This document shows, in pieces, positions 4,666-64,000 of a stretch of DNA of 64,000 nucleotides. The position numbers were made by a program, and so were the translations under genes. The notes below the pieces were generated by a model that was given only the letters and a program-made list of their open reading frames with translations, was not told the DNA's origin and did not search any database. Where the stretch lies: positions 62,001 through 126,000 of IMG/VR virus record IMGVR_UViG_3300033388_007730; one strand, written 5' to 3'. Numbering within the stretch: the stretch's first letter is position 1; each line of letters opens with the position of its first letter.

Positions 4666-6066
4666 ATGAAATTCAGTAATAAAGAGTTTGTGCATTGGCA
4701 TGTTCATAGCGAAAATTCGAAATTTGACGGATTGGCGAAATTAGATGAGTTAGTAATGAGAGCAAGAGAGATGGGGTTCCCAGCTCTTGCACTTACTGAC
4801 CATGGAAATATTCAGGGCTGGATTCAGTTCTTGAAATTAGCGAGAGCTACTAAAGATAAAAAAGGTAATGATATTCCTTATGCTCCTATTAAACCTATTC
4901 TTGGTTGCGAGTTTTATCTTTCCCGAAAAATGGATATAGGTCAATATGATGAAAAGATGAAGAAGAAGGGTGAGCCTGTAAGACAACAACCGGATAAGAG
5001 GAAAGGAAATAGACATTTAAATCTTTACGCAATGAACTTTAAGGGATATAAGAATATTTGCAGATTATCTCAAGCTTCATTCACAAGAGGATTTTACTCA
5101 GATCCAAGAATTGATATAACTACTTTAGCGGAGCATAGTGAAGGTGTTATGATAGGTTCTGCTTGCTTATCTAGTCTGATTAATGTTAATCTTATGTATG
5201 GAAGATACAATGAAGCTAAACAAGTTTGCACTACTTTAAAAGATATATTTGGAGAGAATTTTTTCCTAGAAATAATGTATCATGGAATTCCTGAAGAAAG
5301 AGAAATATTACCTTACATATTTCAACTATCAAAAGAATTAGAGATACCAGTAGTCGCTACTAATGATTCTCATTATATACATAAGGAACAAGGAAGATCA
5401 CAAGAGTTATTAATGTGCATGTCTCAGCAGAGGTGTATAAAAGATTCTAAAAGATTAAACTTTAGACATATGGAATTTTATTTGAAAAGTGCTGATGAGA
5501 TGTACAAATTATTTAAGGGTCATCCAGAAGCTCTTGTAAATTCAAGAGTATTGGCAGAGAGAATTAATACAAAAGATATTGAAGAGAATTTGTTTGGAGG
5601 TATGAGACTTCCTATTTTTGATATCCCATCAGAGCATAAAGATCCATTTGAGTATATGGAAAAATTAGCCTGGGAAGGAATGAAAAAGATTGGATGGGAT
5701 AAGAGTCAACCACACATAGACGCATTGAAAATGGAGATAAATGATGTGTTAGTGGCAAGAGATAATAATAATTATGATTTTGCTACATATTTCTTAATAG
5801 TAAAAGATTATATTGAGAATGCAAGAGATAATGGTGTGTTAGTAGGTTGCGGAAGAGGAAGTGGATATGCCAGTGTGTTGTTAAGGTGTCTTGGAATTAC
5901 TTATGGAGCTGATCCTTTAGAGTATGGACTTTTATGGGAAAGATTTTTAGGGTTCTCAGATTCTAGGTTCATTAAAGAAAATGATTTTGGCTTTGAAACG
6001 GATATAATTCAACAAACATTAGATATGGATGTTGGTGGTGATGTAGAGGAAGATTTTAATGGATGA
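4666..6066 (+). CDS. dnaE: DNA polymerase III alpha, piece 1 (PHP domain plus start of palm)
   Basis: HWHVHSENSKFDG, ALALTDHGN, GCEFY, VVATNDSHY, GCGRGSG, LGITYGADPLEYGLLWERFL. Confidence 0.9.
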   Translation: MKFSNKEFVHWHVHSENSKFDGLAKLDELVMRAREMGFPALALTDHGNIQGWIQFLKLARATKDKKGNDIPYAPIKPILGCEFYLSRKMDIGQYDEKMKKKGEPVRQQPDKRKGNRHLNLYAMNFKGYKNICRLSQASFTRGFYSDPRIDITTLAEHSEGVMIGSACLSSLINVNLMYGRYNEAKQVCTTLKDIFGENFFLEIMYHGIPEEREILPYIFQLSKELEIPVVATNDSHYIHKEQGRSQELLMCMSQQRCIKDSKRLNFRHMEFYLKSADEMYKLFKGHPEALVNSRVLAERINTKDIEENLFGGMRLPIFDIPSEHKDPFEYMEKLAWEGMKKIGWDKSQPHIDALKMEINDVLVARDNNNYDFATYFLIVKDYIENARDNGVLVGCGRGSGYASVLLRCLGITYGADPLEYGLLWERFLGFSDSRFIKENDFGFETDIIQQTLDMDVGGDVEEDFNG

Positions 6067-6244
6067 ACAGAAAGAATTACTATGTAGATTTTGGGAAAAG
6101 AAATTGGGTCTAGAGTATATGTAATATCTTAGAGATCGAAAAAATGATTACCTTATGAGTATTTTAGAAGAAGATTAGAATAAATTTGATATTATAGACA
6201 TAGATAAAGAAGAAGAAAAAGAAGATGATATATGTTCCACTTAG
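6059..6244 (+). pseudogene. small tagged ORF interrupted by two in-frame stops
   Basis: SD GAGGA, ATG 6059; TAA 6122 and TAG 6176 in frame; readthrough gives ...NKFDIIDIDKEEE. Confidence 0.4.
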
Positions 6245-6404
6245 TGATGAAGAAAAAGGACAATTAAAACAGTACTGGCTGACAATGCGTCCAAAAGAAT
6301 ATGTTGATGTTCTATTTGATGATCTTCCTGTCCCTCATTATTGTTGTGATTATATGGTAAATATTACAGAGACACAAAAAAGATTTGAGTTAATGGATAT
6401 ATGA
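6225..6404 (+). CDS. 59-aa hypothetical protein with C-terminal tag (absent from ORF track)
   Basis: hand translation MIYVPLSDEEKG...TETQKRFELMDI*. Confidence 0.65.
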   Translation: MIYVPLSDEEKGQLKQYWLTMRPKEYVDVLFDDLPVPHYCCDYMVNITETQKRFELMDI

Positions 6405-6422
6405 GTATAAGAATAAAGAAAC

Positions 6423-6662
6423 TTGATGATAGAGGTAATTTATTTTAAATATGATAATGGATACGAGGTCTGGAGAGATTTTGATGAGGAAAATAATTGT
6501 ATTCATTGGAAAGATTTTAGTGGAGTAGAACATTGGTGGGAGCATAGAGTAGAAACTTCAGTGATGTGTATAAAAATTACAAAAGAAGAATTTGAGGAAA
6601 TAGAAGCAAAGAAAAAAGGAAAGAAAAATATTTATACAAGATTTGAGATAATGGATATGTGA
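6423..6662 (+). CDS. short aromatic-repeat protein with C-terminal tag; true start probably 6401 with a frameshift near 6440
   Basis: repeat units YFKYDNGYEVWRDF / IHWKDFSGVEHWWEH; ends YTRFEIMDM; upstream frame MSIRIKKLDDRGNL fits the repeat. Confidence 0.55.
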   Translation: MMIEVIYFKYDNGYEVWRDFDEENNCIHWKDFSGVEHWWEHRVETSVMCIKITKEEFEEIEAKKKGKKNIYTRFEIMDM

Positions 6663-6673
6663 AAGAAGATTAA

Positions 6674-7723
6674 ATGCCTGATTTAGAAATAATTAGAAAA
6701 GAAATTATAGAGGAAATAAGCAATAGATTGAAAGGTGATCCTAGATTGCCAAAAGCTGTTTCTAAAGCAAATGAAGAGTTAGATGTTATGAGCAATACTA
6801 ACGGATTAGAACAGAAAAACAATTTAGAAACATTTTATTCTATATGGAAGAAGAATCAAGGGAAAGTTGGACATAAAAATGAGATAAACAGTTGGACAGC
6901 TTTCTTTTTAGGAATGACAGAAACTAAACCTGAAAAAGGTAGTGAGTTCGTTCCCATAAGAAGGTGTTTCGCAAGAGCTGGGTTCCCAGACATAGATACA
7001 GATTTTGATGATGAGAAGAGAGATAGTGTTTATGACTACATCATTGCAAAATATGGAAGAGAAAATGTTGGTAATATTGGTACTCATGGAAAGCTGAAAT
7101 TTAAGAGCTGTGTGACAAGAGTTGTTAAGGCATTAGATGTGGCAGGATCTTTCCTTAAAAGTCCAGAGGCTTATATTTCTGATAATGCTCAAAAGGTTAC
7201 AGAGATATTAGAGCCATTTCCTAAAAAGGGATTAATGAAAGTTACTGATGAAGATGGCAATGAGCATTTGATAAAGAATTTTAAAGATGCTTATAGATAT
7301 TGTCCTGATTTTGCTAAGTCTATAGACAAACATCCAGAGATAAAAATACACGCCGAACATATAGAAGGAACATTTGCAAATTTTGGTTGTTTAGCAGCTA
7401 ATACTCCGATTTTAACTGAAAAAGGTTGGATAAGAATAGATCAATTAACTACTAAATATAAAATAGCTTATGTTGATAAAGATGAAAAAATTAAATATAC
7501 TGATGAGTTCAAGAAGTTTAAAACAGGTATAAAAAAGACATACCGAATGAGATTATCTAGCGGTTCATTCATTGATGTGACAGATGAACATTTAATTTTT
7601 ACAGATAAGGGATGTGTTAAGTTTGAAGAAATTAGAAAAAATCAAAAAAAATATAAAATATATGAAGTTAAAGAATATATCAAAGAACGACGAGCCAAGC
7701 TTTGTGATATATTAGATAATTAA
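6674..7723 (+). CDS. dnaE: DNA polymerase III alpha, piece 2, fused to N-terminal half of a split intein
   Basis: FPDIDTDFDD catalytic motif, YIIAKYGRENV, IEGTFANFG then intein block A CLAANTPILT. Confidence 0.88.
   Translation: MPDLEIIRKEIIEEISNRLKGDPRLPKAVSKANEELDVMSNTNGLEQKNNLETFYSIWKKNQGKVGHKNEINSWTAFFLGMTETKPEKGSEFVPIRRCFARAGFPDIDTDFDDEKRDSVYDYIIAKYGRENVGNIGTHGKLKFKSCVTRVVKALDVAGSFLKSPEAYISDNAQKVTEILEPFPKKGLMKVTDEDGNEHLIKNFKDAYRYCPDFAKSIDKHPEIKIHAEHIEGTFANFGCLAANTPILTEKGWIRIDQLTTKYKIAYVDKDEKIKYTDEFKKFKTGIKKTYRMRLSSGSFIDVTDEHLIFTDKGCVKFEEIRKNQKKYKIYEVKEYIKERRAKLCDILDN
7388..7723 (+). mobile_element. split intein N-fragment (IntN, 111 aa)
   Basis: starts Cys CLAANTPILTEKG; block B IDVTDEHLIFT; stop follows with no endonuclease. 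Confidence 0.85.
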
Positions 7724-7751
7724 TTACCTAATCATAAGGTTATGGAGGGAA

Positions 7752-7895
7752 ATGATGAATAATTGTGAGTTATTTGAAATAGTATCAATAGAAGAATTAG
7801 ATTTTGAAGATGTTTATGATATCTCTATGAATGAGGGTCCAGAATTTTTTCAAAATGAGCATAATTATGTGGCTAGCAATATAGTTGTTCATAAT
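7752..7895 (+). mobile_element. split intein C-fragment (IntC, about 48 aa)
   Basis: block F VYDISM...HNYVASNI and block G VVHN followed by +1 Cys. Confidence 0.85.
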
Positions 7896-9152
7896 TGTCA
7901 CGCTGCTGGAGTTGTGGTATCGGATGTCCCACTTGATGAGATTGCTCCGTTGAGAACAGCAAGGAAAGGTATGTTAGCAACTCAGTTCCCTAATGAAGAT
8001 TTAGAGACTTTGGGTTTGATAAAATTTGATATATTAGCTATCGCTACTTTGTCTGTTATAAAAAATACTGTGGAAATGATTAGAAAGAATTATGATATAA
8101 CAATAGATATAGAGAATTTACCGTTAGATGATCAAATGACTTTTGAGATGTATAGAACCGGAAATCTTGGAGGTGTCTTCCAATGTGAGAATTGGGGTAT
8201 GCAAAGGACAATGAGAGATATTAAGGTTGACAGTTTTGGAGATATAGTTGCTGGTTTAGCATTATACAGACCTGGACCTATGGATTCTATCCCTAAATAT
8301 TGTGCTAGAAAAAATGGAGAAGAGGACGTTAGTTATTTTCATCCTTCAATTGAACCTCACGTTAAGAAGTATCTTGAAAAAACTTATGGAATTTTATGTT
8401 ATCAAGAACAGGTTATGCAGATTTGTAATTCATTAGCTGGATTTACTATTACTGATGGTTATATTATGATTAAAGCTATTGGTAAGAAAAAAGATTATTT
8501 GATGAATAAATTTAAAGAACAATTCATAGGTGGATGTGTTAAGAATGGTGTAGATGAGTATGTCGCTATAGAATACTGGACTAAATTTATAACTCCATTT
8601 GCAAGTTATGGGTTTAATTTGGCGCACAGTGCTTGTTACGGTTATAATTCTTATACTACTGCTTATTTAAAAGCACATTATCCTGAAGAGTTTATGTGTT
8701 CATTCTTAAATGTTATAACTCATGGATCTGGAGATAAATATGATAAGATAGAAGCATTTGAGAGAGAATTTAAGAGGAAAATGAATGTTAAGTTTCTTCC
8801 AAGAGATATTAATCGGTCGAAGGTGGAGTATATCGTTGAAAAGCCTGGAGATAGATGCGGAGTAACAAAGATAGAGATGAGACCTAGTTTAATATGCAAA
8901 GGAGTTGGATTTAAAGCTGCTGAGGACATAGAGCAAAATCAACCATTCAAAGATTTGGAAGAGTTTGTTGAGAAGATAAATACTTCTACTGTAGATACTA
9001 GAGTTATTGAAGCATTGGCAATAGGCGGATATTGGGGCAAGAAATATGTCAAGGATCCACTTAGTTTAGTCAAAAAGTTCACTATGATACGCGATGATAG
9101 AAAAAAATCTTTTCAAAAAGGATATGAACCAGGAGCAGATATTTTTGGATAA
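7752..9152 (+). CDS. dnaE: split intein C-fragment fused to DNA polymerase III alpha piece 3
   Basis: own SD GGAGG at 7744; ...NIVVHN|CHAAGVVVSD, KFDIL, GVFQCE, ALYRPGPMD, FASYGFNLAHSACY, YLKAHYP; no OB-fold or tau-binding tail. Confidence 0.9.
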   Translation: MMNNCELFEIVSIEELDFEDVYDISMNEGPEFFQNEHNYVASNIVVHNCHAAGVVVSDVPLDEIAPLRTARKGMLATQFPNEDLETLGLIKFDILAIATLSVIKNTVEMIRKNYDITIDIENLPLDDQMTFEMYRTGNLGGVFQCENWGMQRTMRDIKVDSFGDIVAGLALYRPGPMDSIPKYCARKNGEEDVSYFHPSIEPHVKKYLEKTYGILCYQEQVMQICNSLAGFTITDGYIMIKAIGKKKDYLMNKFKEQFIGGCVKNGVDEYVAIEYWTKFITPFASYGFNLAHSACYGYNSYTTAYLKAHYPEEFMCSFLNVITHGSGDKYDKIEAFEREFKRKMNVKFLPRDINRSKVEYIVEKPGDRCGVTKIEMRPSLICKGVGFKAAEDIEQNQPFKDLEEFVEKINTSTVDTRVIEALAIGGYWGKKYVKDPLSLVKKFTMIRDDRKKSFQKGYEPGADIFG

Positions 9153-16948: not shown

Positions 16949-16983
16949 CATTTCTGTTAATAAGTTAGATGAGGTGGGAATTT

Positions 16984-19962
16984 ATGAAGACGTTGCAATC
17001 AAATGAGTATCAAAAAGAGGCTATTTCGCATAAAGATGGTCCGTGTCTAGTAACATCATGTCCTGGTTCAGGAAAAACATTCACTTTAGTAGAGAGGATT
17101 GTTGCTCTTATTAAAAGTGGAGTAGAACCAAAAAATCTTCTTTGTATCACATTTACAAATAAAGCTGCTAATGAAATGAGAGAAAGGATTTGCGATAGAC
17201 TTGGAATTAAGAAGCCAGGATTCTTTATTGGAACTTTCCACTCTTTATGCGCTAAGATGTTGAGAAAGATTGGTCCAGGTAGAGGATATATTGCTAATTT
17301 TACAATCTTAGCAGATAGAGAACAAATGGATATGGTGATGCAAGTTTCCAGGCATTTGGGATATGATATAAAAATAGGAGATGCTAGAAGAATAGCTCAT
17401 GCTGTTAACTATTATAGAGATCAGATGGAAGATTTTATCTGGGTAGAAGAAAGATTAAAAACACTACCTATGATTGAAATAGGAAGAACTTATTTAGAGA
17501 GATGTAAAAATAATTCTATGATAGATTTTAGTGGGCTTATCTCAGAAGCTATTAGAATTATTGAAGAGAACCAAGATATTAGAGAAAAAATACAAGATAC
17601 TTTTAAGTATATTTTAGTTGATGAGACTCAAGACACTAATAAATCACAATTCCATTTGGTTAATTTGTTAGGAGCAAAATGGAAAAATATTATGTTGATA
17701 GGCGATATCGATCAATGTCTTGTTGATGGAACAAAAATAGAGACTAGAGATGGTATAAAAAATATAGAAGATGTAATAGAAGGAGAAGAAGTTAGAGTTG
17801 CTACTGGAGGTGATAAAACATTTTTTACTAAGGTGAATAAAAAATATAGAAAAAAAATTAAAAATGATAAAAAAATTGTTAAAATTAAAACACGATTAGG
17901 GAAAGAAATAATAGCAACAAATGAGCATGTATTTTTTGCTGATTTTGTTGTTCCTTCTGAATTAAATAAGTATTTTGTTTATCTAATGTATAAAAAAGAT
18001 ATAGGATATAGAATAGGATTGACTAGCACCTGTGTTAAACGTGAGGGGAAAAGTAAATTTGGATTTTTAGGAAGGTTAAGAGGGGAAAAAGCGGATAGAA
18101 TTTGGATAATAGAAACTTGTAAGACATATCGGGAAGCAGCTTATTATGAACAATATTATTCATCAGAATATGGTTTGCCCACATGGACTTTTGTAGATAG
18201 AGCTTATCTCAGTAAAAATGCGTATACTAAAGAAGATATAACAAAATTATTTGGATCTGTTAACACTACTAAAAAGGCTAAAAAATTGATGGAAGATAAA
18301 AACATTGAATTTCAATACTTTTATCATTTTCCATCTGCTTCTAATAAAAAAATGAGAGATAATTTTACAATTACTATGTGTGGAGATTCTAGATATGCTT
18401 CTTTACATAGATATTGTTATTCTTTTTCGGGGAATAATAAAAAAGAAAAATTAATAGAAGCTGGATTAAATGTTAGAAAATCTAAAAAGAAGTATTGGAG
18501 GATAGAAAGCGCTAATCAAAATTTGAAGAATGTCTATGACATTTATGATAGAATACAAAGTGTAATTCCAGATATAAATATAGTAGAAAAAGCTAATTTT
18601 GCTGGTCATTCTTTGCTTTTGATGCCATCATCACATCTTAAGATGGGTATTAATATTGCTATTTTTCATGATGGGAATATTGTATTGGACGAAGTTGTAG
18701 AAGTGAAAAATGATGTATTAGAAAATGGGTGGGTTAATGATCTAGATATAAATAGGTATCATAATTATATAGCAAATGGTATAGTAAGTCATAACTCAAT
18801 TTATGGTTGGAGAGGAGCTAGGTATCAGAATATTCAGGAATTTATGGATATGTACCCTGAGTGTAATGTAATATCATTATCTAAGAATTACAGATCTACG
18901 CCAGAAATAATTGCTGTTGCTGATAAACTCATTAAGAGGAATAGCAGTCATGTTAAAATAAAATTTGAGACAGATAACAAAAGTGGGCAACCAGTAAAAT
19001 GTTATAGTTTTGGAGATCAAAATAAAGAAGCTGAATGGATTGGTAAAATGGTTAAGAAACTCATGGAAGATGGTGGCTGGGATCCAGAAGATATGGCTGT
19101 TCTATATAGAGTTAATAAGATGTCTGAACCTGTTGAGCAATCTTTGGCGACAGCAGGTATTCCATACGAGGTTGTAGGATCATGGAATTTTTATGATAGA
19201 AAAGAAGCGAGAGATTGTATTGCTATGTTAAAGCTTATAGCCAATAATAAGGATGCTATATCTTTTCATAGAGTTATCAGTATGATGAAAGGCATGGGGA
19301 ATATAACAATAGGAAAAATAGAGATGAAAGCTGCTAATAAGAACATACCTTTGTTGGATGCTGCATTGCTTATAAAAGCTGAGTCTAATTCTGTTTCTAT
19401 AAAGAAAGCATGTCAAGAAATTTATGATAAATATAATCAGAAGTGGGATTTTTCTAATCCTGCTAAGTGTTTATCTATGGTAGTTGATGGATTAGGATAT
19501 CCTGATTATCTTCATAAGAAATATGGAGGAGATGCAGCCGAAAGATTAGAAAATGTAGAACAGATTGTAGATGCTTGTGGAGAGTTCGCAGGTCATGAAA
19601 ATGGTCTTAATCAGTACTTGCAACAGATAGCATTAGTTACTTCTGCTGACAAAGAAGATGAGGGTGGAAAAGTTTCTTTAATGAGTTTACATGCTGCTAA
19701 AGGATTAGAGTTTCCTATTGTATTTATGATAGGTGTTGAGAACGGAATTCTGCCGCATCAGCAAGCTGTGGTTGATGATCCTGCTAGTGGATTGGAAGAA
19801 GAGAGAAGATTATGTTATGTGGGGATGACAAGAGCAAAGAAAGTTTTGTATGTTACTTGGTGTAGAAATAGAAAAAGATTTGGCAAGTTTGGGGTAATGT
19901 CATATAAGGGCACTAAACCAAGTGAATTCTTAAAAGAGTGTGGATTGATGAGGGACGAATAA
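16984..19962 (+). CDS. uvrD: UvrD/PcrA SF1 helicase containing an intein
   Basis: CPGSGKT, ITFTNKAANEM, LVDETQDTN, GDIDQ|intein|SIYGWRGA, NYRS, HAAKGLEF, EERRLCYVGMTRA. Confidence 0.92.
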   Translation: MKTLQSNEYQKEAISHKDGPCLVTSCPGSGKTFTLVERIVALIKSGVEPKNLLCITFTNKAANEMRERICDRLGIKKPGFFIGTFHSLCAKMLRKIGPGRGYIANFTILADREQMDMVMQVSRHLGYDIKIGDARRIAHAVNYYRDQMEDFIWVEERLKTLPMIEIGRTYLERCKNNSMIDFSGLISEAIRIIEENQDIREKIQDTFKYILVDETQDTNKSQFHLVNLLGAKWKNIMLIGDIDQCLVDGTKIETRDGIKNIEDVIEGEEVRVATGGDKTFFTKVNKKYRKKIKNDKKIVKIKTRLGKEIIATNEHVFFADFVVPSELNKYFVYLMYKKDIGYRIGLTSTCVKREGKSKFGFLGRLRGEKADRIWIIETCKTYREAAYYEQYYSSEYGLPTWTFVDRAYLSKNAYTKEDITKLFGSVNTTKKAKKLMEDKNIEFQYFYHFPSASNKKMRDNFTITMCGDSRYASLHRYCYSFSGNNKKEKLIEAGLNVRKSKKKYWRIESANQNLKNVYDIYDRIQSVIPDINIVEKANFAGHSLLLMPSSHLKMGINIAIFHDGNIVLDEVVEVKNDVLENGWVNDLDINRYHNYIANGIVSHNSIYGWRGARYQNIQEFMDMYPECNVISLSKNYRSTPEIIAVADKLIKRNSSHVKIKFETDNKSGQPVKCYSFGDQNKEAEWIGKMVKKLMEDGGWDPEDMAVLYRVNKMSEPVEQSLATAGIPYEVVGSWNFYDRKEARDCIAMLKLIANNKDAISFHRVISMMKGMGNITIGKIEMKAANKNIPLLDAALLIKAESNSVSIKKACQEIYDKYNQKWDFSNPAKCLSMVVDGLGYPDYLHKKYGGDAAERLENVEQIVDACGEFAGHENGLNQYLQQIALVTSADKEDEGGKVSLMSLHAAKGLEFPIVFMIGVENGILPHQQAVVDDPASGLEEERRLCYVGMTRAKKVLYVTWCRNRKRFGKFGVMSYKGTKPSEFLKECGLMRDE
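17716..18795 (+). mobile_element. intein (360 aa) in helicase motif III
   Basis: CLVDGTKI...ATNEHVFF...DLDINRYHNYIANGIVSHN followed by +1 Ser. Confidence 0.9.
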
Positions 19963-61943: not shown

Positions 61944-62498
61944 ATGTTAAAAATAGACATGTATCTTAAAAGATATGGTTTGAAAATTGAAGAAATTAAA
62001 AAAGTAGATTTAACAAAAGTCTATTACCAATATAGACCTGGTGTCGATTATGATAGAATTCTTACTAACTCTCCTCACTTTGAATTAGCTCAACATTACT
62101 ATAATAAGGGATTGAAATGGTTGAATGCAAATTTTAAAAATACAAAATATTTTATATTTCAAAAAGATATACTAAAAATCACTCCCTACGTTCCTGTGAA
62201 GAAAATGAGGTTGTTTGACTCTTTAAAAAAGGGTTATTTAGGGAAGGGATATGAGAATGACCGTATAGTTATTTTAAATGATCCATTTATTTGTACTAGA
62301 TATGCATTAAATTTGTCACTGCCTTCTCCAGAGGTTTTTATGGGGCATCATAGAGCAGGAGCGATGTTGGCTTTAGGGCAAAAAAATGTAGAAGTTATTG
62401 TGGCTGTTGACGATATGATAGGAACTAAGAATTGTTATGGTAGACTCCATGATATTTATAGTTTGGAGAAGGTTCAAAAAATGAGGTATAACTTATGA
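61944..62498 (+). CDS. ParB/Srx-like protein
   Basis: LFDSLKKGY...EVFMGHHRAGAMLALG..VEV. Confidence 0.55.
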   Translation: MLKIDMYLKRYGLKIEEIKKVDLTKVYYQYRPGVDYDRILTNSPHFELAQHYYNKGLKWLNANFKNTKYFIFQKDILKITPYVPVKKMRLFDSLKKGYLGKGYENDRIVILNDPFICTRYALNLSLPSPEVFMGHHRAGAMLALGQKNVEVIVAVDDMIGTKNCYGRLHDIYSLEKVQKMRYNL

Positions 62499-64000
62499 GT
62501 ATTTTGATTACAGGTATAACTGGTTTTGTGGGAAGTCATTTAGCAGATTATCTTTTGGAAGAAACAGATGATATCATTCATGGGTTAACAAGGTGGAGAT
62601 CTCCAAAAGAAAATGTTTTACATCTTATAGATGATAGCTCAATTCGTTTTGAATATGGTGATTTAACAGATTTTTCATCTTTGTATAATATTATTAATCT
62701 TAATCGTCCAAGAGTTATATTTCATTTAGCTGCTCAATCTTATGTTCCATATAGTTTTGATGTACCTGCTGCTACTCTTGATTCTAATGTAATAGGAACT
62801 TGTAATCTACTGGAGGCTGTTAAACTTTTGAAAGACGATAAAGGATATGATCCTATTGTTCATATTTGTTCTTCATCAGAAGTTTACGGACAGGTTTCAG
62901 AAGACAATGTTCCAATCACAGAAGATTGTCCTTTTGCTCCAGCTTCTCCATATGCTGTTTCTAAAGTTGGTGAGGATATGCTGGGGTTTCAGTATTGGAC
63001 ATCTTGGGGTGTAAAAACTATTAGGACTAGAATGTTTACTCATAGTGTAAGTAAATGGACTCCTGTTATTTTAAAAGATACATTAAGTGAATTGATAGAT
63101 ATAAAATATATTTCAGAAATAAGAAAAAAAGGGAAAGAAGGGGGATATTTTTCGGGAAAAATGTTAGAAGATAATACTCAAATATGGGATATGAATAGAT
63201 CTAATTTAGAAGTGTGGAATGATGAAAAATGGACAAAAATAAAACATATATCTTGTCACTCTATTAATAATTGTAAAATGTTAGAAATAATTAGTAGAGG
63301 TGGGGTTATCTGTGCTACAGATAATCATTCTATAATTGATGAAAAATCAAAAGAAATTTTAGCTTCAGATTTAAAATGTGGAGATAAGATAAAGATAACT
63401 TCTTTGCCAAATATTGAGATTACTGATATTTCAGAAGATTTAGCTTGGTTATATGGATTTTTTGTAGCTGAAGGGACAGTAACTGGAGGAAGATTAAAAA
63501 TTTCTAACAAGAATATTGATTTGTTAGAAAAATCAAAAGTTATTTTTTTAAAATATTTGGCAATTGATGGAACTATAGACCAGTATAAAGACATTTATAC
63601 TTTAAGATTAAGAAAGCCATTTTGTATAGCAAAAAGATTTTATGAAGATTGTTATGCAACTGACAAAAATAAAAAAATACCAAAAATTATTTTAAACGCT
63701 AATAAAAAATCAAAAATTTCTTTTTTACGGGGGTATAATTGTGGAGATGGAAACTTAAAAAATAATGTAAAAAGTGATTTTTATAGATTTAAAACAAAAT
63801 CTCCTATTTTAGCTATGGGATTATGTTATTTTATAGAAAGTGTTTTAAATGTAAAGTATAAAATTAATGTTGAACATAGAGATGATAAAAGATATTTTGA
63901 AATAAGATGTTTGTCTCAAAAAAATACAAAAAATGGGGAGTGGTTAAAAAAAGATAACAATGTTATTTTAAAAATAATGAAAATGGAATATGAAGATGAA
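62495..64000 (+). CDS. GDP-mannose 4,6-dehydratase/Rmd-type extended SDR with an intein; runs off window (absent from ORF track)
   Basis: hand translation MSILITGITGFVGSHLADYL, GDLTD, FHLAAQSYV, SSSEVYG, SPYAVSK, RMFTH; frame open to 64000. Confidence 0.88.
   Translation, partial: MSILITGITGFVGSHLADYLLEETDDIIHGLTRWRSPKENVLHLIDDSSIRFEYGDLTDFSSLYNIINLNRPRVIFHLAAQSYVPYSFDVPAATLDSNVIGTCNLLEAVKLLKDDKGYDPIVHICSSSEVYGQVSEDNVPITEDCPFAPASPYAVSKVGEDMLGFQYWTSWGVKTIRTRMFTHSVSKWTPVILKDTLSELIDIKYISEIRKKGKEGGYFSGKMLEDNTQIWDMNRSNLEVWNDEKWTKIKHISCHSINNCKMLEIISRGGVICATDNHSIIDEKSKEILASDLKCGDKIKITSLPNIEITDISEDLAWLYGFFVAEGTVTGGRLKISNKNIDLLEKSKVIFLKYLAIDGTIDQYKDIYTLRLRKPFCIAKRFYEDCYATDKNKKIPKIILNANKKSKISFLRGYNCGDGNLKNNVKSDFYRFKTKSPILAMGLCYFIESVLNVKYKINVEHRDDKRYFEIRCLSQKNTKNGEWLKKDNNVILKIMKMEYEDE
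63044..64000 (+). mobile_element. LAGLIDADG intein, truncated by window end
   Basis: starts Ser SVSKWTPVILK; block B ATDNHSII; LYGFFVAEG and FLRGYNCGDG. Confidence 0.82.

What the first reader, a model, noticed from the sequence alone, without database searches (positions are those of the whole stretch)
62495..64000. Intein in a GDP-sugar dehydratase
This gene is missing from the ORF track. After the conserved RMFTH, where this family normally continues with a Thr/Ser/Glu-Gly/Ser-Pro-Arg type motif, a Ser-initiated intein with a TxxH block and two LAGLIDADG motifs begins. Inteins concentrate in replication and nucleotide-metabolism proteins, so one in a nucleotide-sugar enzyme is uncommon and implies the glycan pathway is conserved and important to this element.
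Basis: partly seen in the sequence, partly recalled or inferred. Interest (0 to 1): 0.6.

Follow-up and report, generated by a model that had tools for sequence, protein, structure and literature searches.

The report
Intein inside a phage GDP-sugar dehydratase
A sugar-modifying enzyme gene of a very large phage is interrupted by a complete self-splicing protein element (an intein with its own homing nuclease); the call is correct, but the same element sits at the same spot in well over a hundred database genes, so it is a sound, fairly ordinary find.

Summary
The ORF at window 62495 runs off the window. Extended in the parent record, it is a 669-aa gene (to 64504). It reads N-extein (aa 1-183, ending RMFTH), then a 341-aa intein (Ser1, TxxH, two LAGLIDADG motifs, block F, His-Asn), then Thr+1 and a 145-aa C-extein (TGPRRG...). 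The two exteins align to contiguous residues (..209 | 210..) of the solved GDP-D-glycero-D-manno-heptose 4,6-dehydratase 7US5. In 77 intein-less genomic homologues the two halves abut directly. The AlphaFold model of the intein (pLDDT 84) matches endonuclease-bearing VMA inteins, PI-PfuI and PI-SceI. The element is not rare. All 120 listed protein clusters (42-75% identity; CPR bacteria, Rokubacteria, Chloroflexota, other viral contigs) carry it at the same site, with every splicing and nuclease residue conserved. Intein and extein trees conflict strongly, and the intein is more AT-rich than its host gene in all 8 loci examined. Both point to horizontal movement by homing. The claim that the intein shows the pathway is important is not supported. 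I found no paper describing this intein. Verdict: a new member of a known kind. The phage fragment carries at least six further intein or split-intein loci.

The parts
62495..64000 (+). Intein-interrupted GDP-sugar 4,6-dehydratase-type SDR gene. It has 669 codons and continues past the window end to window-equivalent 64504 (G000:C1:124495-126504; L002:496-2505).
   Evidence: ORF lists; translation (P0001); Pfam; coordinates.
62495..63043 (+). N-extein, aa 1-183. It holds the Rossmann GxxGxxG motif (GITGFVG, 62513-62533), the catalytic Ser-Ser-Glu (62873-62881), YxxxK (62951-62965), and ends in RMFTH (63029-63043).
   Evidence: PF16363 positions 1-184. 7US5 residues 26-209, E 7e-55, with identical HICSSSEVYG. 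Residue conservation across 120 homologues.
63044..64000 (+). Intein, aa 184-524 (341 aa). The in-window part is aa 184-502. It continues to window-equivalent 64066 (L002:1045-2067), ending GGNIVHN, and is followed by Thr+1.
   Evidence: Boundaries. Profile hits to TliVMA/PhoVMA inteins and PI-PkoII. AF2 model pLDDT 84.4, pTM 0.85. Foldseek top hits are HEN-bearing inteins at E 1.8e-21.
63044..63082 (+). Intein block A with the Ser1 nucleophile (SVSKWTPVILKDT).
   Evidence: Ser in 117 and Cys in 1 of 120 homologues at this position; His at -1 in 118 of 120.
63317..63328 (+). Intein block B, T-D-N-H (TxxH).
   Evidence: Thr and His are invariant in 120 of 120 homologues.
63443..63475 (+). First LAGLIDADG motif (AWLYGFFVAEG) with catalytic Glu326.
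   Evidence: Pfam LAGLIDADG_3. Glu in 119 of 120 and Gly in 120 of 120. I-DmoI sequence and fold matches.
63722..63751 (+). Second LAGLIDADG motif (FLRGYNCGDG) with catalytic Asp418.
   Evidence: Second LAGLIDADG_3 stretch. Asp and Gly are invariant in 120 of 120.

Best explanation
The gene encodes a precursor in which a canonical class-1 intein carrying a LAGLIDADG homing endonuclease is inserted in-frame in a GDP-sugar 4,6-dehydratase of the extended-SDR family. The insertion lies in one of the host family's most conserved motifs (R-x-F-x-H | T/S-G-P-R-R). Inferred mechanism after translation: the Hint domain performs an N-to-O acyl shift at Ser1 (Ser184), assisted by block-B Thr/His. Thr+1 (Thr525) then attacks the ester (transesterification). 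Asn341 (Asn524), aided by the penultimate His, cyclises and releases the intein. An O-to-N shift then joins ...RMFTH to TGPRRG..., giving a 328-aa dehydratase. That enzyme would make a GDP-4-keto-6-deoxy sugar for the downstream tailoring enzymes: a TPP-dependent E1 alpha/beta pair, Fcl-like reductases, an RmlC-like epimerase, a B12-radical-SAM enzyme and other methyltransferases. At the DNA level the nested endonuclease is inferred to cut intein-less alleles at the junction sequence, so the intein is copied in by repair (homing). This explains its patchy, horizontally transferred distribution. The phage most likely acquired the dehydratase-E1alpha-E1beta cassette from bacteria, with the intein already in place or invading later. 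Shown: the architecture, all motifs, the exact insertion point, the predicted fold, the distribution, and the tree and composition conflict. Inferred: splicing and endonuclease activity, and the sugar substrate.
For: Complete ORF with S1...HN|T+1 and no stops. Exteins map to contiguous residues 26-209 and 210-355 of 7US5. In 77 intein-less genomic homologues the N- and C-extein matches abut base-to-base. Sequence and profile hits to solved inteins and I-DmoI. The AF2 model (pLDDT 84) is best matched by HEN-bearing inteins 7QSU/7QSS/7QST, PI-PfuI, PI-PkoII and PI-SceI. All 120 listed clusters share the architecture, and 112 fit the junction pattern FxH|S...HN|[TS]G[PA]RR. Splicing and endonuclease catalytic residues are conserved in 119-120 of 120. 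On intein columns the extein clade is rejected (AU p 4e-85), and on extein columns the intein clade is rejected (p 8e-11). Intein GC is below extein GC in 8 of 8 loci, with GC3 0.29 vs 0.73 in L029. The cassette is syntenic with bacterial contigs. The host enzyme keeps GxxGxxG, S-S-E and YxxxK.
Against: No experiment shows splicing or DNA cleavage. Pfam Intein_splicing scores 28.1 bits, below its 35.8-bit gathering score. The clades tested by AU were named after seeing the trees, and 'quick' trees without the mixture model were used. For the phage's own intein the sister relation to P0039 is not significantly discordant with the extein (p 0.19). The substrate is unknown: the TIGR01472 Gmd equivalog cut-off is far from met, and no NDP-sugar pyrophosphorylase is present in the 219-kb fragment. 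The record is only about 44% complete by CheckV.
Confidence: 0.9

Rival explanations
1. The intein is a fixed, domesticated or decaying passenger. It still splices, but its endonuclease is no longer active, and the element is inherited only vertically with the gene cassette.
For: For the phage copy itself the intein/extein discordance is not significant (AU p 0.19). Identities of intein and extein to most close homologues are similar (about 65-70% each). The homing-cycle model predicts loss of endonuclease function after fixation (PMC1654191, abstract listed).
Against: Both LAGLIDADG acidic residues are kept in 119-120 of 120 homologues down to about 42% identity. Strong tree incongruence exists elsewhere in the family. 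Intein-less alleles are the majority among close genomic homologues, so targets are available. The intein is compositionally foreign in GC-rich hosts.
Confidence: 0.25
2. The intein acts as a conditional post-translational switch. Splicing, and hence dehydratase activity and glycan synthesis, is gated by redox state, temperature or a substrate during infection.
For: The insertion lies in a highly conserved motif of the host enzyme, so the precursor should be inactive until spliced. The intein is as conserved as the enzyme itself.
Against: No specific sensor feature was seen. Insertion at conserved motifs is equally expected for a purely selfish element (PMC7765530). 77 of 80 close homologues work without it.
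Confidence: 0.08
3. The gene is dead: the intein is splicing-defective and the dehydratase is a pseudogene in this phage.
For: There is no direct evidence of splicing. Pfam Intein_splicing is below its gathering threshold.
Against: The 669-codon frame is uninterrupted. Every nucleophile and assisting residue is intact, and the host catalytic residues are intact. It is the only 4,6-dehydratase-type gene at the head of an otherwise intact tailoring cluster.
Confidence: 0.04
4. It is an assembly chimera, or a non-splicing inserted domain that stays in the mature protein.
For: The record is a metagenomic assembly. Only one weak sequencing-run holder was found.
Against: The same architecture with the same junctions occurs in more than 100 independently assembled proteins from NCBI, JGI, ENA and Logan. 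The insert has the full Hint block set and a predicted intein fold.
Confidence: 0.01

Closest known systems
Homing-endonuclease-bearing archaeal VMA inteins (TliVMA, PhoVMA; PDB 7QSU, 7QSS, 7QST), PI-PfuI, PI-PkoII, PI-SceI
   Same: Bipartite architecture: a Hint splicing domain split by a two-motif LAGLIDADG endonuclease. Blocks A, B, C, E, F and G are present, with the His-Asn end. These are the best sequence-profile and fold matches.
   Different: Only 11-20% identity to these matches. It starts with Ser rather than Cys and uses Thr at +1. The host protein is a nucleotide-sugar dehydratase rather than an ATPase, polymerase or RNR. At 341 aa it is compact and lacks the extra DNA-recognition region of PI-SceI.
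GDP-D-glycero-D-manno-heptose 4,6-dehydratase of Campylobacter jejuni (PDB 7US5)
   Same: Closest solved relative of both exteins (E 7e-55 and 3e-25). Identical HICSSSEVYG catalytic stretch, YxxxK, and the TH|SGPRR junction motif.
   Different: 7US5 has no intein. The substrate of the phage enzyme is untested (GDP-mannose or GDP-heptose), and no heptose-pathway or pyrophosphorylase gene was found in the fragment.
Canonical GDP-mannose 4,6-dehydratase Gmd (TIGR01472; 1DB3, 1RPN) and GDP-6-deoxy-D-lyxo-4-hexulose reductase Rmd (2PK3)
   Same: Same Pfam family PF16363 and the same fold class. Databases name the intein-bearing homologues 'GDP-mannose 4,6-dehydratase'.
   Different: TIGR01472 scores 118.9 + 46.9 bits for the two exteins against a cut-off of 415. 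PDB Gmd and Rmd hits are much weaker than 7US5 on the N-extein.
Intein in UDP-glucose dehydrogenase (listed in InBase, cited in PMC2874743)
   Same: A precedent for an intein in a nucleotide-sugar enzyme rather than a replication protein.
   Different: Different enzyme fold and insertion site, and an archaeal host (the last from my own recollection of InBase, not tested here).
Inteins of phage genomes (e.g. Campylobacter phage IBB_35: terminase, PhoH, RNR; actinobacteriophage inteins)
   Same: Phage genomes that accumulate several inteins and homing endonucleases (PMC3322345; bioRxiv 10.1101/2025.01.02.630785, listed).
   Different: Here two of the invaded genes are not DNA or nucleotide-metabolism genes: a sugar dehydratase and a papain-like peptidase.

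Membership tests
Intein (Hint-domain protein-splicing element, class 1) | In-frame insertion in a host protein whose two halves are contiguous in intein-less homologues | tested here: met
   The exteins align to 7US5 residues ..209 and 210... In 77 intein-less loci the tblastn matches abut exactly.
Intein (Hint-domain protein-splicing element, class 1) | N-terminal Cys/Ser nucleophile and block B TxxH | tested here: met
   Ser184 and T275-x-x-H278. They are conserved in 117 (+1 Cys) and 120 of 120 homologues.
Intein (Hint-domain protein-splicing element, class 1) | C-terminal His-Asn followed by Ser/Thr/Cys at +1 | tested here: met
   H523-N524 | T525. His-Asn in 120 of 120; +1 is Thr in 113 and Ser in 7.
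Intein (Hint-domain protein-splicing element, class 1) | Hint fold | tested here: met
   The AF2 model (pLDDT 84.4, pTM 0.85) is best matched by solved inteins (E 1.8e-21 to 4.5e-16, TM 0.57-0.68). This is a predicted structure, not a solved one.
Intein (Hint-domain protein-splicing element, class 1) | Pfam PF14890 Intein_splicing above the gathering score | tested here: not met
   28.1 bits against a cut-off of 35.8. The model spans the endonuclease insert poorly. The profile search against PDB inteins is significant (E 1.9e-14).
Intein (Hint-domain protein-splicing element, class 1) | Protein splicing activity | not testable with these tools
   Needs expression plus SDS-PAGE or mass spectrometry.
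LAGLIDADG homing endonuclease (two-motif, monomeric) | Two LAGLIDADG motifs, each ending in a catalytic acidic residue followed by Gly | tested here: met
   ..VAEG (E326) and ..CGDG (D418). Pfam LAGLIDADG_3 35.7 bits against a cut-off of 22.5, in two stretches. Conserved in 119 and 120 of 120. I-DmoI hits.
LAGLIDADG homing endonuclease (two-motif, monomeric) | Site-specific cleavage of the intein-less allele | not testable with these tools
   Only indirect evidence: tree incongruence and foreign base composition.
GDP-mannose 4,6-dehydratase, canonical Gmd (NCBIfam TIGR01472 equivalog) | Score above the curated equivalog cut-off (415 bits) | tested here: not met
   118.9 bits (N-extein) and 46.9 bits (C-extein), scored apart. 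The spliced sequence was deliberately not built. The sum is still far below 415.
Extended-SDR NDP-sugar 4,6-dehydratase (Pfam PF16363 GDP_Man_Dehyd) | Family HMM match, GxxGxxG, Ser/Thr-x-Glu and YxxxK catalytic residues | tested here: met
   243.7 bits against a cut-off of 27. GITGFVG, S127-S128-E129 and Y153-x-x-x-K157 are identical to 7US5 in these motifs and conserved in homologues.
GDP-D-glycero-D-manno-heptose 4,6-dehydratase (7US5-like) | Heptose substrate specificity and accompanying GDP-heptose pathway genes | tested here: inconclusive
   It is the best solved relative. Substrate is not testable here. No NTP_transferase (PF00483) was found in the 219-kb fragment. GmhA- and HddA-type genes were not searched for.

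The most novel reading that the evidence does not exclude
This is an undescribed, still-mobile intein family specific to the FxH|T/SGPRR motif of GDP-sugar 4,6-dehydratases. AT-rich huge phages like this one may be its reservoir and vehicle between distant bacterial phyla: the intein is compositionally at home here (GC3 0.14 vs 0.16) but foreign in GC-rich hosts (GC3 0.29 vs 0.73). In this reading the phage is an 'intein incubator' whose inteins have spread beyond replication genes into glycan and protease genes.
Probability: 0.2. Interest if true: 0.55.

Novelty: new member of a known kind. Interest (0 to 1): 0.35.

Why it matters
The result adds a well-supported extein family, GDP-sugar 4,6-dehydratases, to the short list of non-replication enzymes invaded by inteins. 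There are hundreds of natural alleles, with and without the intein, that could be used to study homing and extein dependence. For annotation, 660-690-aa 'GDP-mannose dehydratases' should be read as intein precursors. For phage biology, it flags a roughly half-megabase-class phage fragment with an unusually dense set of inteins, including split inteins encoded by adjacent ORFs, and a large glycan-synthesis island. The compact Ser1/Thr+1 intein and the naturally split DnaE and RNA-ligase inteins could interest protein engineers. It does not change any concept of how inteins work.

Tried and rejected
**Searches that found nothing**
- The search for related loci with the single protein found nothing in viral contigs because its patterns were too specific. 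The alignment-based scan worked.
- Literature searches for an intein in GDP-mannose dehydratase, or in epimerase/dehydratase enzymes, gave no relevant paper.
- A search for the 7US5 paper gave nothing useful.
- NCLDV capsid (PF04451) is absent, but the control genomes cannot ring for it, so this is uninformative.
- PHROGs and Pfam gave nothing on the giant 1000-2000-aa ORFs.
- phmmer of the GMD intein against all ORFs of the genome found only itself. It is therefore not a copy of the genome's other inteins.
- No tRNAs were found in the regions scanned. No NTP_transferase was found in the fragment.

**Tests that were weak or inconclusive**
- The AU test did not show that the phage intein's sister relation to P0039 conflicts with the extein tree (p 0.19). 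I do not claim a recent transfer for this particular copy.
- The look-up of sequencing runs gave one weak holder (marine sediment metagenome, share 0.07). That is too weak to name a habitat.

- The large representative search (search of protein representatives) was not run, because the word search already answered the question.
- The exteins were searched apart, by reference. The extein tree was made by dropping the intein columns from the full alignment.
- No alternative genetic code was needed.
Full report
**1. What is in the sequence**

With open-ended ORFs allowed, an ATG ORF starts at window 62495 and is still open at 64000 (502 codons). It overlaps the stop of the upstream gene by 4 bases. 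Pfam places aa 4-184 in GDP_Man_Dehyd (E 4.1e-50) and aa 315-368 in LAGLIDADG_3.

The window is G000:C1:62001-126000 of a 219,188-base virus record that CheckV rates about 44% complete. I fetched the downstream DNA (L002 = G000:C1:124000-136000; L002 position = window position minus 61999).

The ORF closes at L002:2505, which is window-equivalent 64504, and encodes 669 aa (P0001). Its parts are:
- N-extein, aa 1-183, ending RTRMFTH.
- Intein, aa 184-524 (341 aa; window 63044 to 64066), reading SVSKWTPV ... GGNIVHN.
- C-extein, aa 525-669, starting TGPRRGDVF.

On the full protein, Pfam reports GDP_Man_Dehyd in two stretches (E 4.7e-72), LAGLIDADG_3 in two stretches, and Intein_splicing over aa 208-524. 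The last scores 28.1 bits, below its gathering score of 35.8.

All canonical intein blocks can be read directly:
- A: Ser1.
- B: T275-D-N-H278.
- C: AWLYGFFVAEG.
- E: FLRGYNCGDG.
- F: EVWDFETENHWFHAG.
- G: IVHN, then Thr+1.

Blocks F and G begin at the first base beyond the window.

**2. Is it really an intein at a precise site?**

The N-extein (aa 3-183) aligns to residues 26-209 of PDB 7US5, GDP-D-glycero-D-manno-heptose 4,6-dehydratase, at E 7e-55. The C-extein (aa 1-140) aligns to residues 210-355 of the same chain at E 3e-25. The solved enzyme reads ...TRMGTH209|S210GPRRSDVF..., so the insert sits exactly between two adjacent residues of an intein-less relative.

A scan of one genome per prokaryotic species returned 80 best loci. 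In 77 of them the tblastn matches to the N- and C-exteins abut base-to-base with no insert. Three loci carry the intein: L030 (Candidatus Nealsonbacteria), L031 (a Syntrophaceae MAG) and L032 (Rokuibacteriota).

The intein alone hits solved inteins and I-DmoI by sequence (E 4.6e-7). As an 8-sequence profile (A2) it hits them more strongly: E 1.9e-14 to the TliVMA intein and 2e-12 to PI-PkoII.

An AlphaFold2 model built on that alignment has mean pLDDT 84.4 and pTM 0.85. Its best Foldseek matches in the PDB are all endonuclease-bearing inteins: 7QSU, 7QSS, 7QST, PI-PfuI, PI-PkoII and PI-SceI, at E 1.8e-21 to 2e-10. I-DmoI matches the central domain.

**3. The host enzyme**

The exteins keep the Rossmann motif GITGFVG, the Ser-Ser-Glu triad region (HICSSSEVYG, identical in 7US5) and YxxxK. 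A 4,6-dehydratase rather than a pure reductase or epimerase is therefore the best reading.

It is not the canonical Gmd equivalog. TIGR01472 gives 118.9 and 46.9 bits for the two halves, against a cut-off of 415. Whether the substrate is GDP-mannose or GDP-heptose cannot be told here. No NDP-sugar pyrophosphorylase (PF00483) lies in the 219-kb fragment, and the gene is the only dehydratase-type PF16363 member in it.

Downstream lie:
- a PDH-E1 alpha/beta-like TPP enzyme pair;
- a FabG-like SDR;
- two GDP-fucose-synthase-like SDRs;
- a B12-radical-SAM enzyme;
- an RmlC-like 3,5-epimerase;
- an FkbM methyltransferase.

Upstream lie two methyltransferases and many glycosyltransferases.

The triplet dehydratase(intein)-E1alpha-E1beta is syntenic with bacterial contigs. 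These are the contig of P0018, L110 (next to flagellin genes), and L030 (E1beta 61-62% identical). The phage therefore appears to carry a bacterial-type sugar-tailoring cassette.

**4. How common is it?**

The word-index search with the whole precursor found 413 proteins at E <= 1e-3. All 120 listed have the same architecture (445-1040 aa; full-length ones mostly 650-700 aa; GDP_Man_Dehyd, nearly all with LAGLIDADG_3 as well). Their identity to the query is 42-75%.

Sources name Rokubacteria/Methylomirabilota, Limnocylindria, Fervidibacter and unclassified bacteria. One JGI record is already annotated 'GDP-D-mannose dehydratase/intein/homing endonuclease'. Three further IMG/VR contigs carry it (L027-L029).

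112 of the 120 fit the junction pattern FxH|S...HN|[TS]G[PA]RR. The remainder are partial sequences or minor variants, and one starts with Cys.

Residue conservation across the 120 is as follows:

| Position | Conservation |
|---|---|
| Ser1 | 117 of 120 (+1 Cys) |
| Block-B Thr and His | 120 of 120 |
| Block-F Asp | 120 of 120 |
| His-Asn | 120 of 120 |
| +1 residue | Thr 113, Ser 7 |
| LAGLIDADG acidic residues | 119 and 120 of 120 |

Two homologues of about 1040 aa (P0055, P0065) carry a second intein in the catalytic motif (..VCS|C...N|SSE.YG).

**5. Evidence that the intein moves**

Identity of homologues to the phage protein differs between parts. P0039 is 73% identical in the intein but 53% in the exteins. 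P0054, P0057, P0061 and P0065 are 35-41% identical in the intein but 64-66% in the exteins.

Maximum-likelihood trees of intein columns and of extein columns disagree:
- The 22-row extein clade holding the phage gene and those four proteins is rejected on intein data (AU p 4e-85).
- The intein clade of those four plus P0078 is rejected on extein data (p 8e-11).
- A third comparison is marginal (p 0.04).

Caveats apply. The clades were named after the trees were seen. The trees were 'quick' ones without the mixture model. For the phage copy itself the discordance is not significant (p 0.19).

Independently, the intein is more AT-rich than its exteins in all 8 loci examined. GC3 is 0.29 vs 0.73 in L029 and 0.24 vs 0.54 in L031. 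In the phage the two are alike at third positions (0.14 vs 0.16), although overall GC is 25.0% vs 33.5%. Only 0.5% of 1023-bp windows in the genome are that AT-rich.

Taken together with the conserved nuclease residues and the majority of empty sites, this fits a homing element that is or recently was active. An AT-rich origin is possible.

**6. Mechanism (inferred from established intein chemistry)**

This is class-1 splicing. Ser184 undergoes an N-O shift. Thr525 then transesterifies. Asn524 forms a succinimide with the help of His523, and an O-N shift follows. The product is a 328-aa dehydratase plus a free 341-aa intein endonuclease.

The insertion breaks the invariant R179-x-F181-x-H183 | G526-x-R528-R529 motif (alignment A1). 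The precursor is therefore expected to be inactive until spliced.

**7. Comparison and novelty**

Architecture and chemistry are those of classical LAGLIDADG inteins. What differs is the host protein. A nucleotide-sugar precedent exists: UDP-glucose dehydrogenase (PMC2874743). I found no paper on an intein in GDP-sugar dehydratases, although databases hold hundreds.

I rate it a new member of a known kind.

**8. Context**

The record looks like a fragment of a very large phage:
- Nearly all genes lie on one strand and there is strong GC skew.
- PHROG replication families are present.
- Bacterial-type DnaE and DnaX are present.

No capsid or terminase was identified in my limited scans.

The fragment is intein-rich. 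The further loci are listed under 'noticed in passing'. The GMD intein is not detectably related to the others.

Noticed in passing
window 16969-19962 (+): A UvrD-like helicase of 997 aa is interrupted by an intein at about aa 263-609 (Pfam Intein_splicing 53.3 bits, above the cut-off), between the UvrD N- and C-terminal domains.
   Followed up: partly
window 4666-9152 (+): DnaE (Pol III alpha) is in three ORFs. ORF 6674-7723 ends its DnaE part at ..FANFG and continues as an IntN of about 112 aa (CLAANTPILT.. with TDEH), then stops. 29 bp later, ORF 7752-9152 begins with a 48-aa IntC (..NIVVHN|CHAAGVV) and resumes DnaE. This is a naturally split intein encoded by adjacent ORFs with no endonuclease between them. 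Piece 1 (4666-6066) is about 600 bp upstream.
   Followed up: partly
L006:10942-13647 (G000:C1:146942-149647, +): A DnaX (clamp-loader tau/gamma) protein of 901 aa carries a large intein (about aa 60-583) with two LAGLIDADG_3 stretches and a Ros/MucR-like segment.
   Followed up: partly
L008:5196-7568 (G000:C1:181196-183568, +): A papain-like Peptidase_C1 protein of 790 aa has an intein with a LAGLIDADG domain inserted in the catalytic-Cys motif..FQGALG|CHDIRTEILT ... ILISGN|SCVAFAA. It has no penultimate His. This is a second non-replication extein in this genome.
   Followed up: partly
L012:985-2659 (G000:C1:195485-197159, +): RNA ligase is split at its KxDG adenylation motif. ORF 1 ends ..ATEKIDG|CFRYDQ...CTADHLF.. 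(IntN), then stops. About 145 bp later, ORF 2 starts with an IntC (..GAVVHN|SNNRVGF) followed by the RNA_ligase domain. This is a second split intein in adjacent ORFs.
   Followed up: partly
L009:7127-9041 (G000:C1:203127-205041, +): An AAA ATPase ORF begins inside a mini-intein and reads ..NGIVSHN|TGKTTIG, so the junction lies in Walker A. Just upstream is a NUMOD3/TnsA-like endonuclease ORF. This resembles the 'fractured gene' arrangement of PMC2677866. The N-extein partner was not located.
   Followed up: no
proteins P0055 and P0065 (homologues, 1039-1040 aa): Two homologues carry a second intein at another site of the same enzyme, inside the catalytic Ser-Ser-Glu motif (..HVCS|CYDE ... FCGN|SSE.YG), in addition to the FxH|TGPRR intein.
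   Followed up: partly
window about 34000-64000 and L002:1-11900: There is a very large glycan-synthesis island. It holds many GT1/GT2/GT4 glycosyltransferases, NeuB, methyltransferases, the dehydratase, a PDH-E1 alpha/beta-like TPP pair (suggesting a two-carbon branched sugar), Fcl-like SDRs, a B12-radical-SAM enzyme, an RmlC-like epimerase and FkbM. The dehydratase-E1alpha-E1beta core is syntenic with bacterial contigs, one of them next to flagellin genes.
   Followed up: partly
whole record G000 (219,188 bases): 208 of 241 ORFs of at least 100 aa are on the + strand, and GC skew is 0.19-0.46 throughout the window. Several ORFs of 1000-2000 aa at the 5' end have no Pfam or PHROG family. No tRNA genes were found in the regions scanned, and no capsid or terminase was identified.
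   Followed up: partly
L002, L027-L032, L110 (intein vs extein DNA): The intein is more AT-rich than the flanking exteins in all 8 loci, strongly so in GC-rich hosts (GC3 0.29 vs 0.73 in L029). This suggests recent arrival from an AT-rich source.
   Followed up: yes
G000:C1:187610-188116 (-) and 211130-212038 (+): There are free-standing LAGLIDADG-type ORFs, the second fused to an AP2 domain. L028 holds a relative of both.
   Followed up: no
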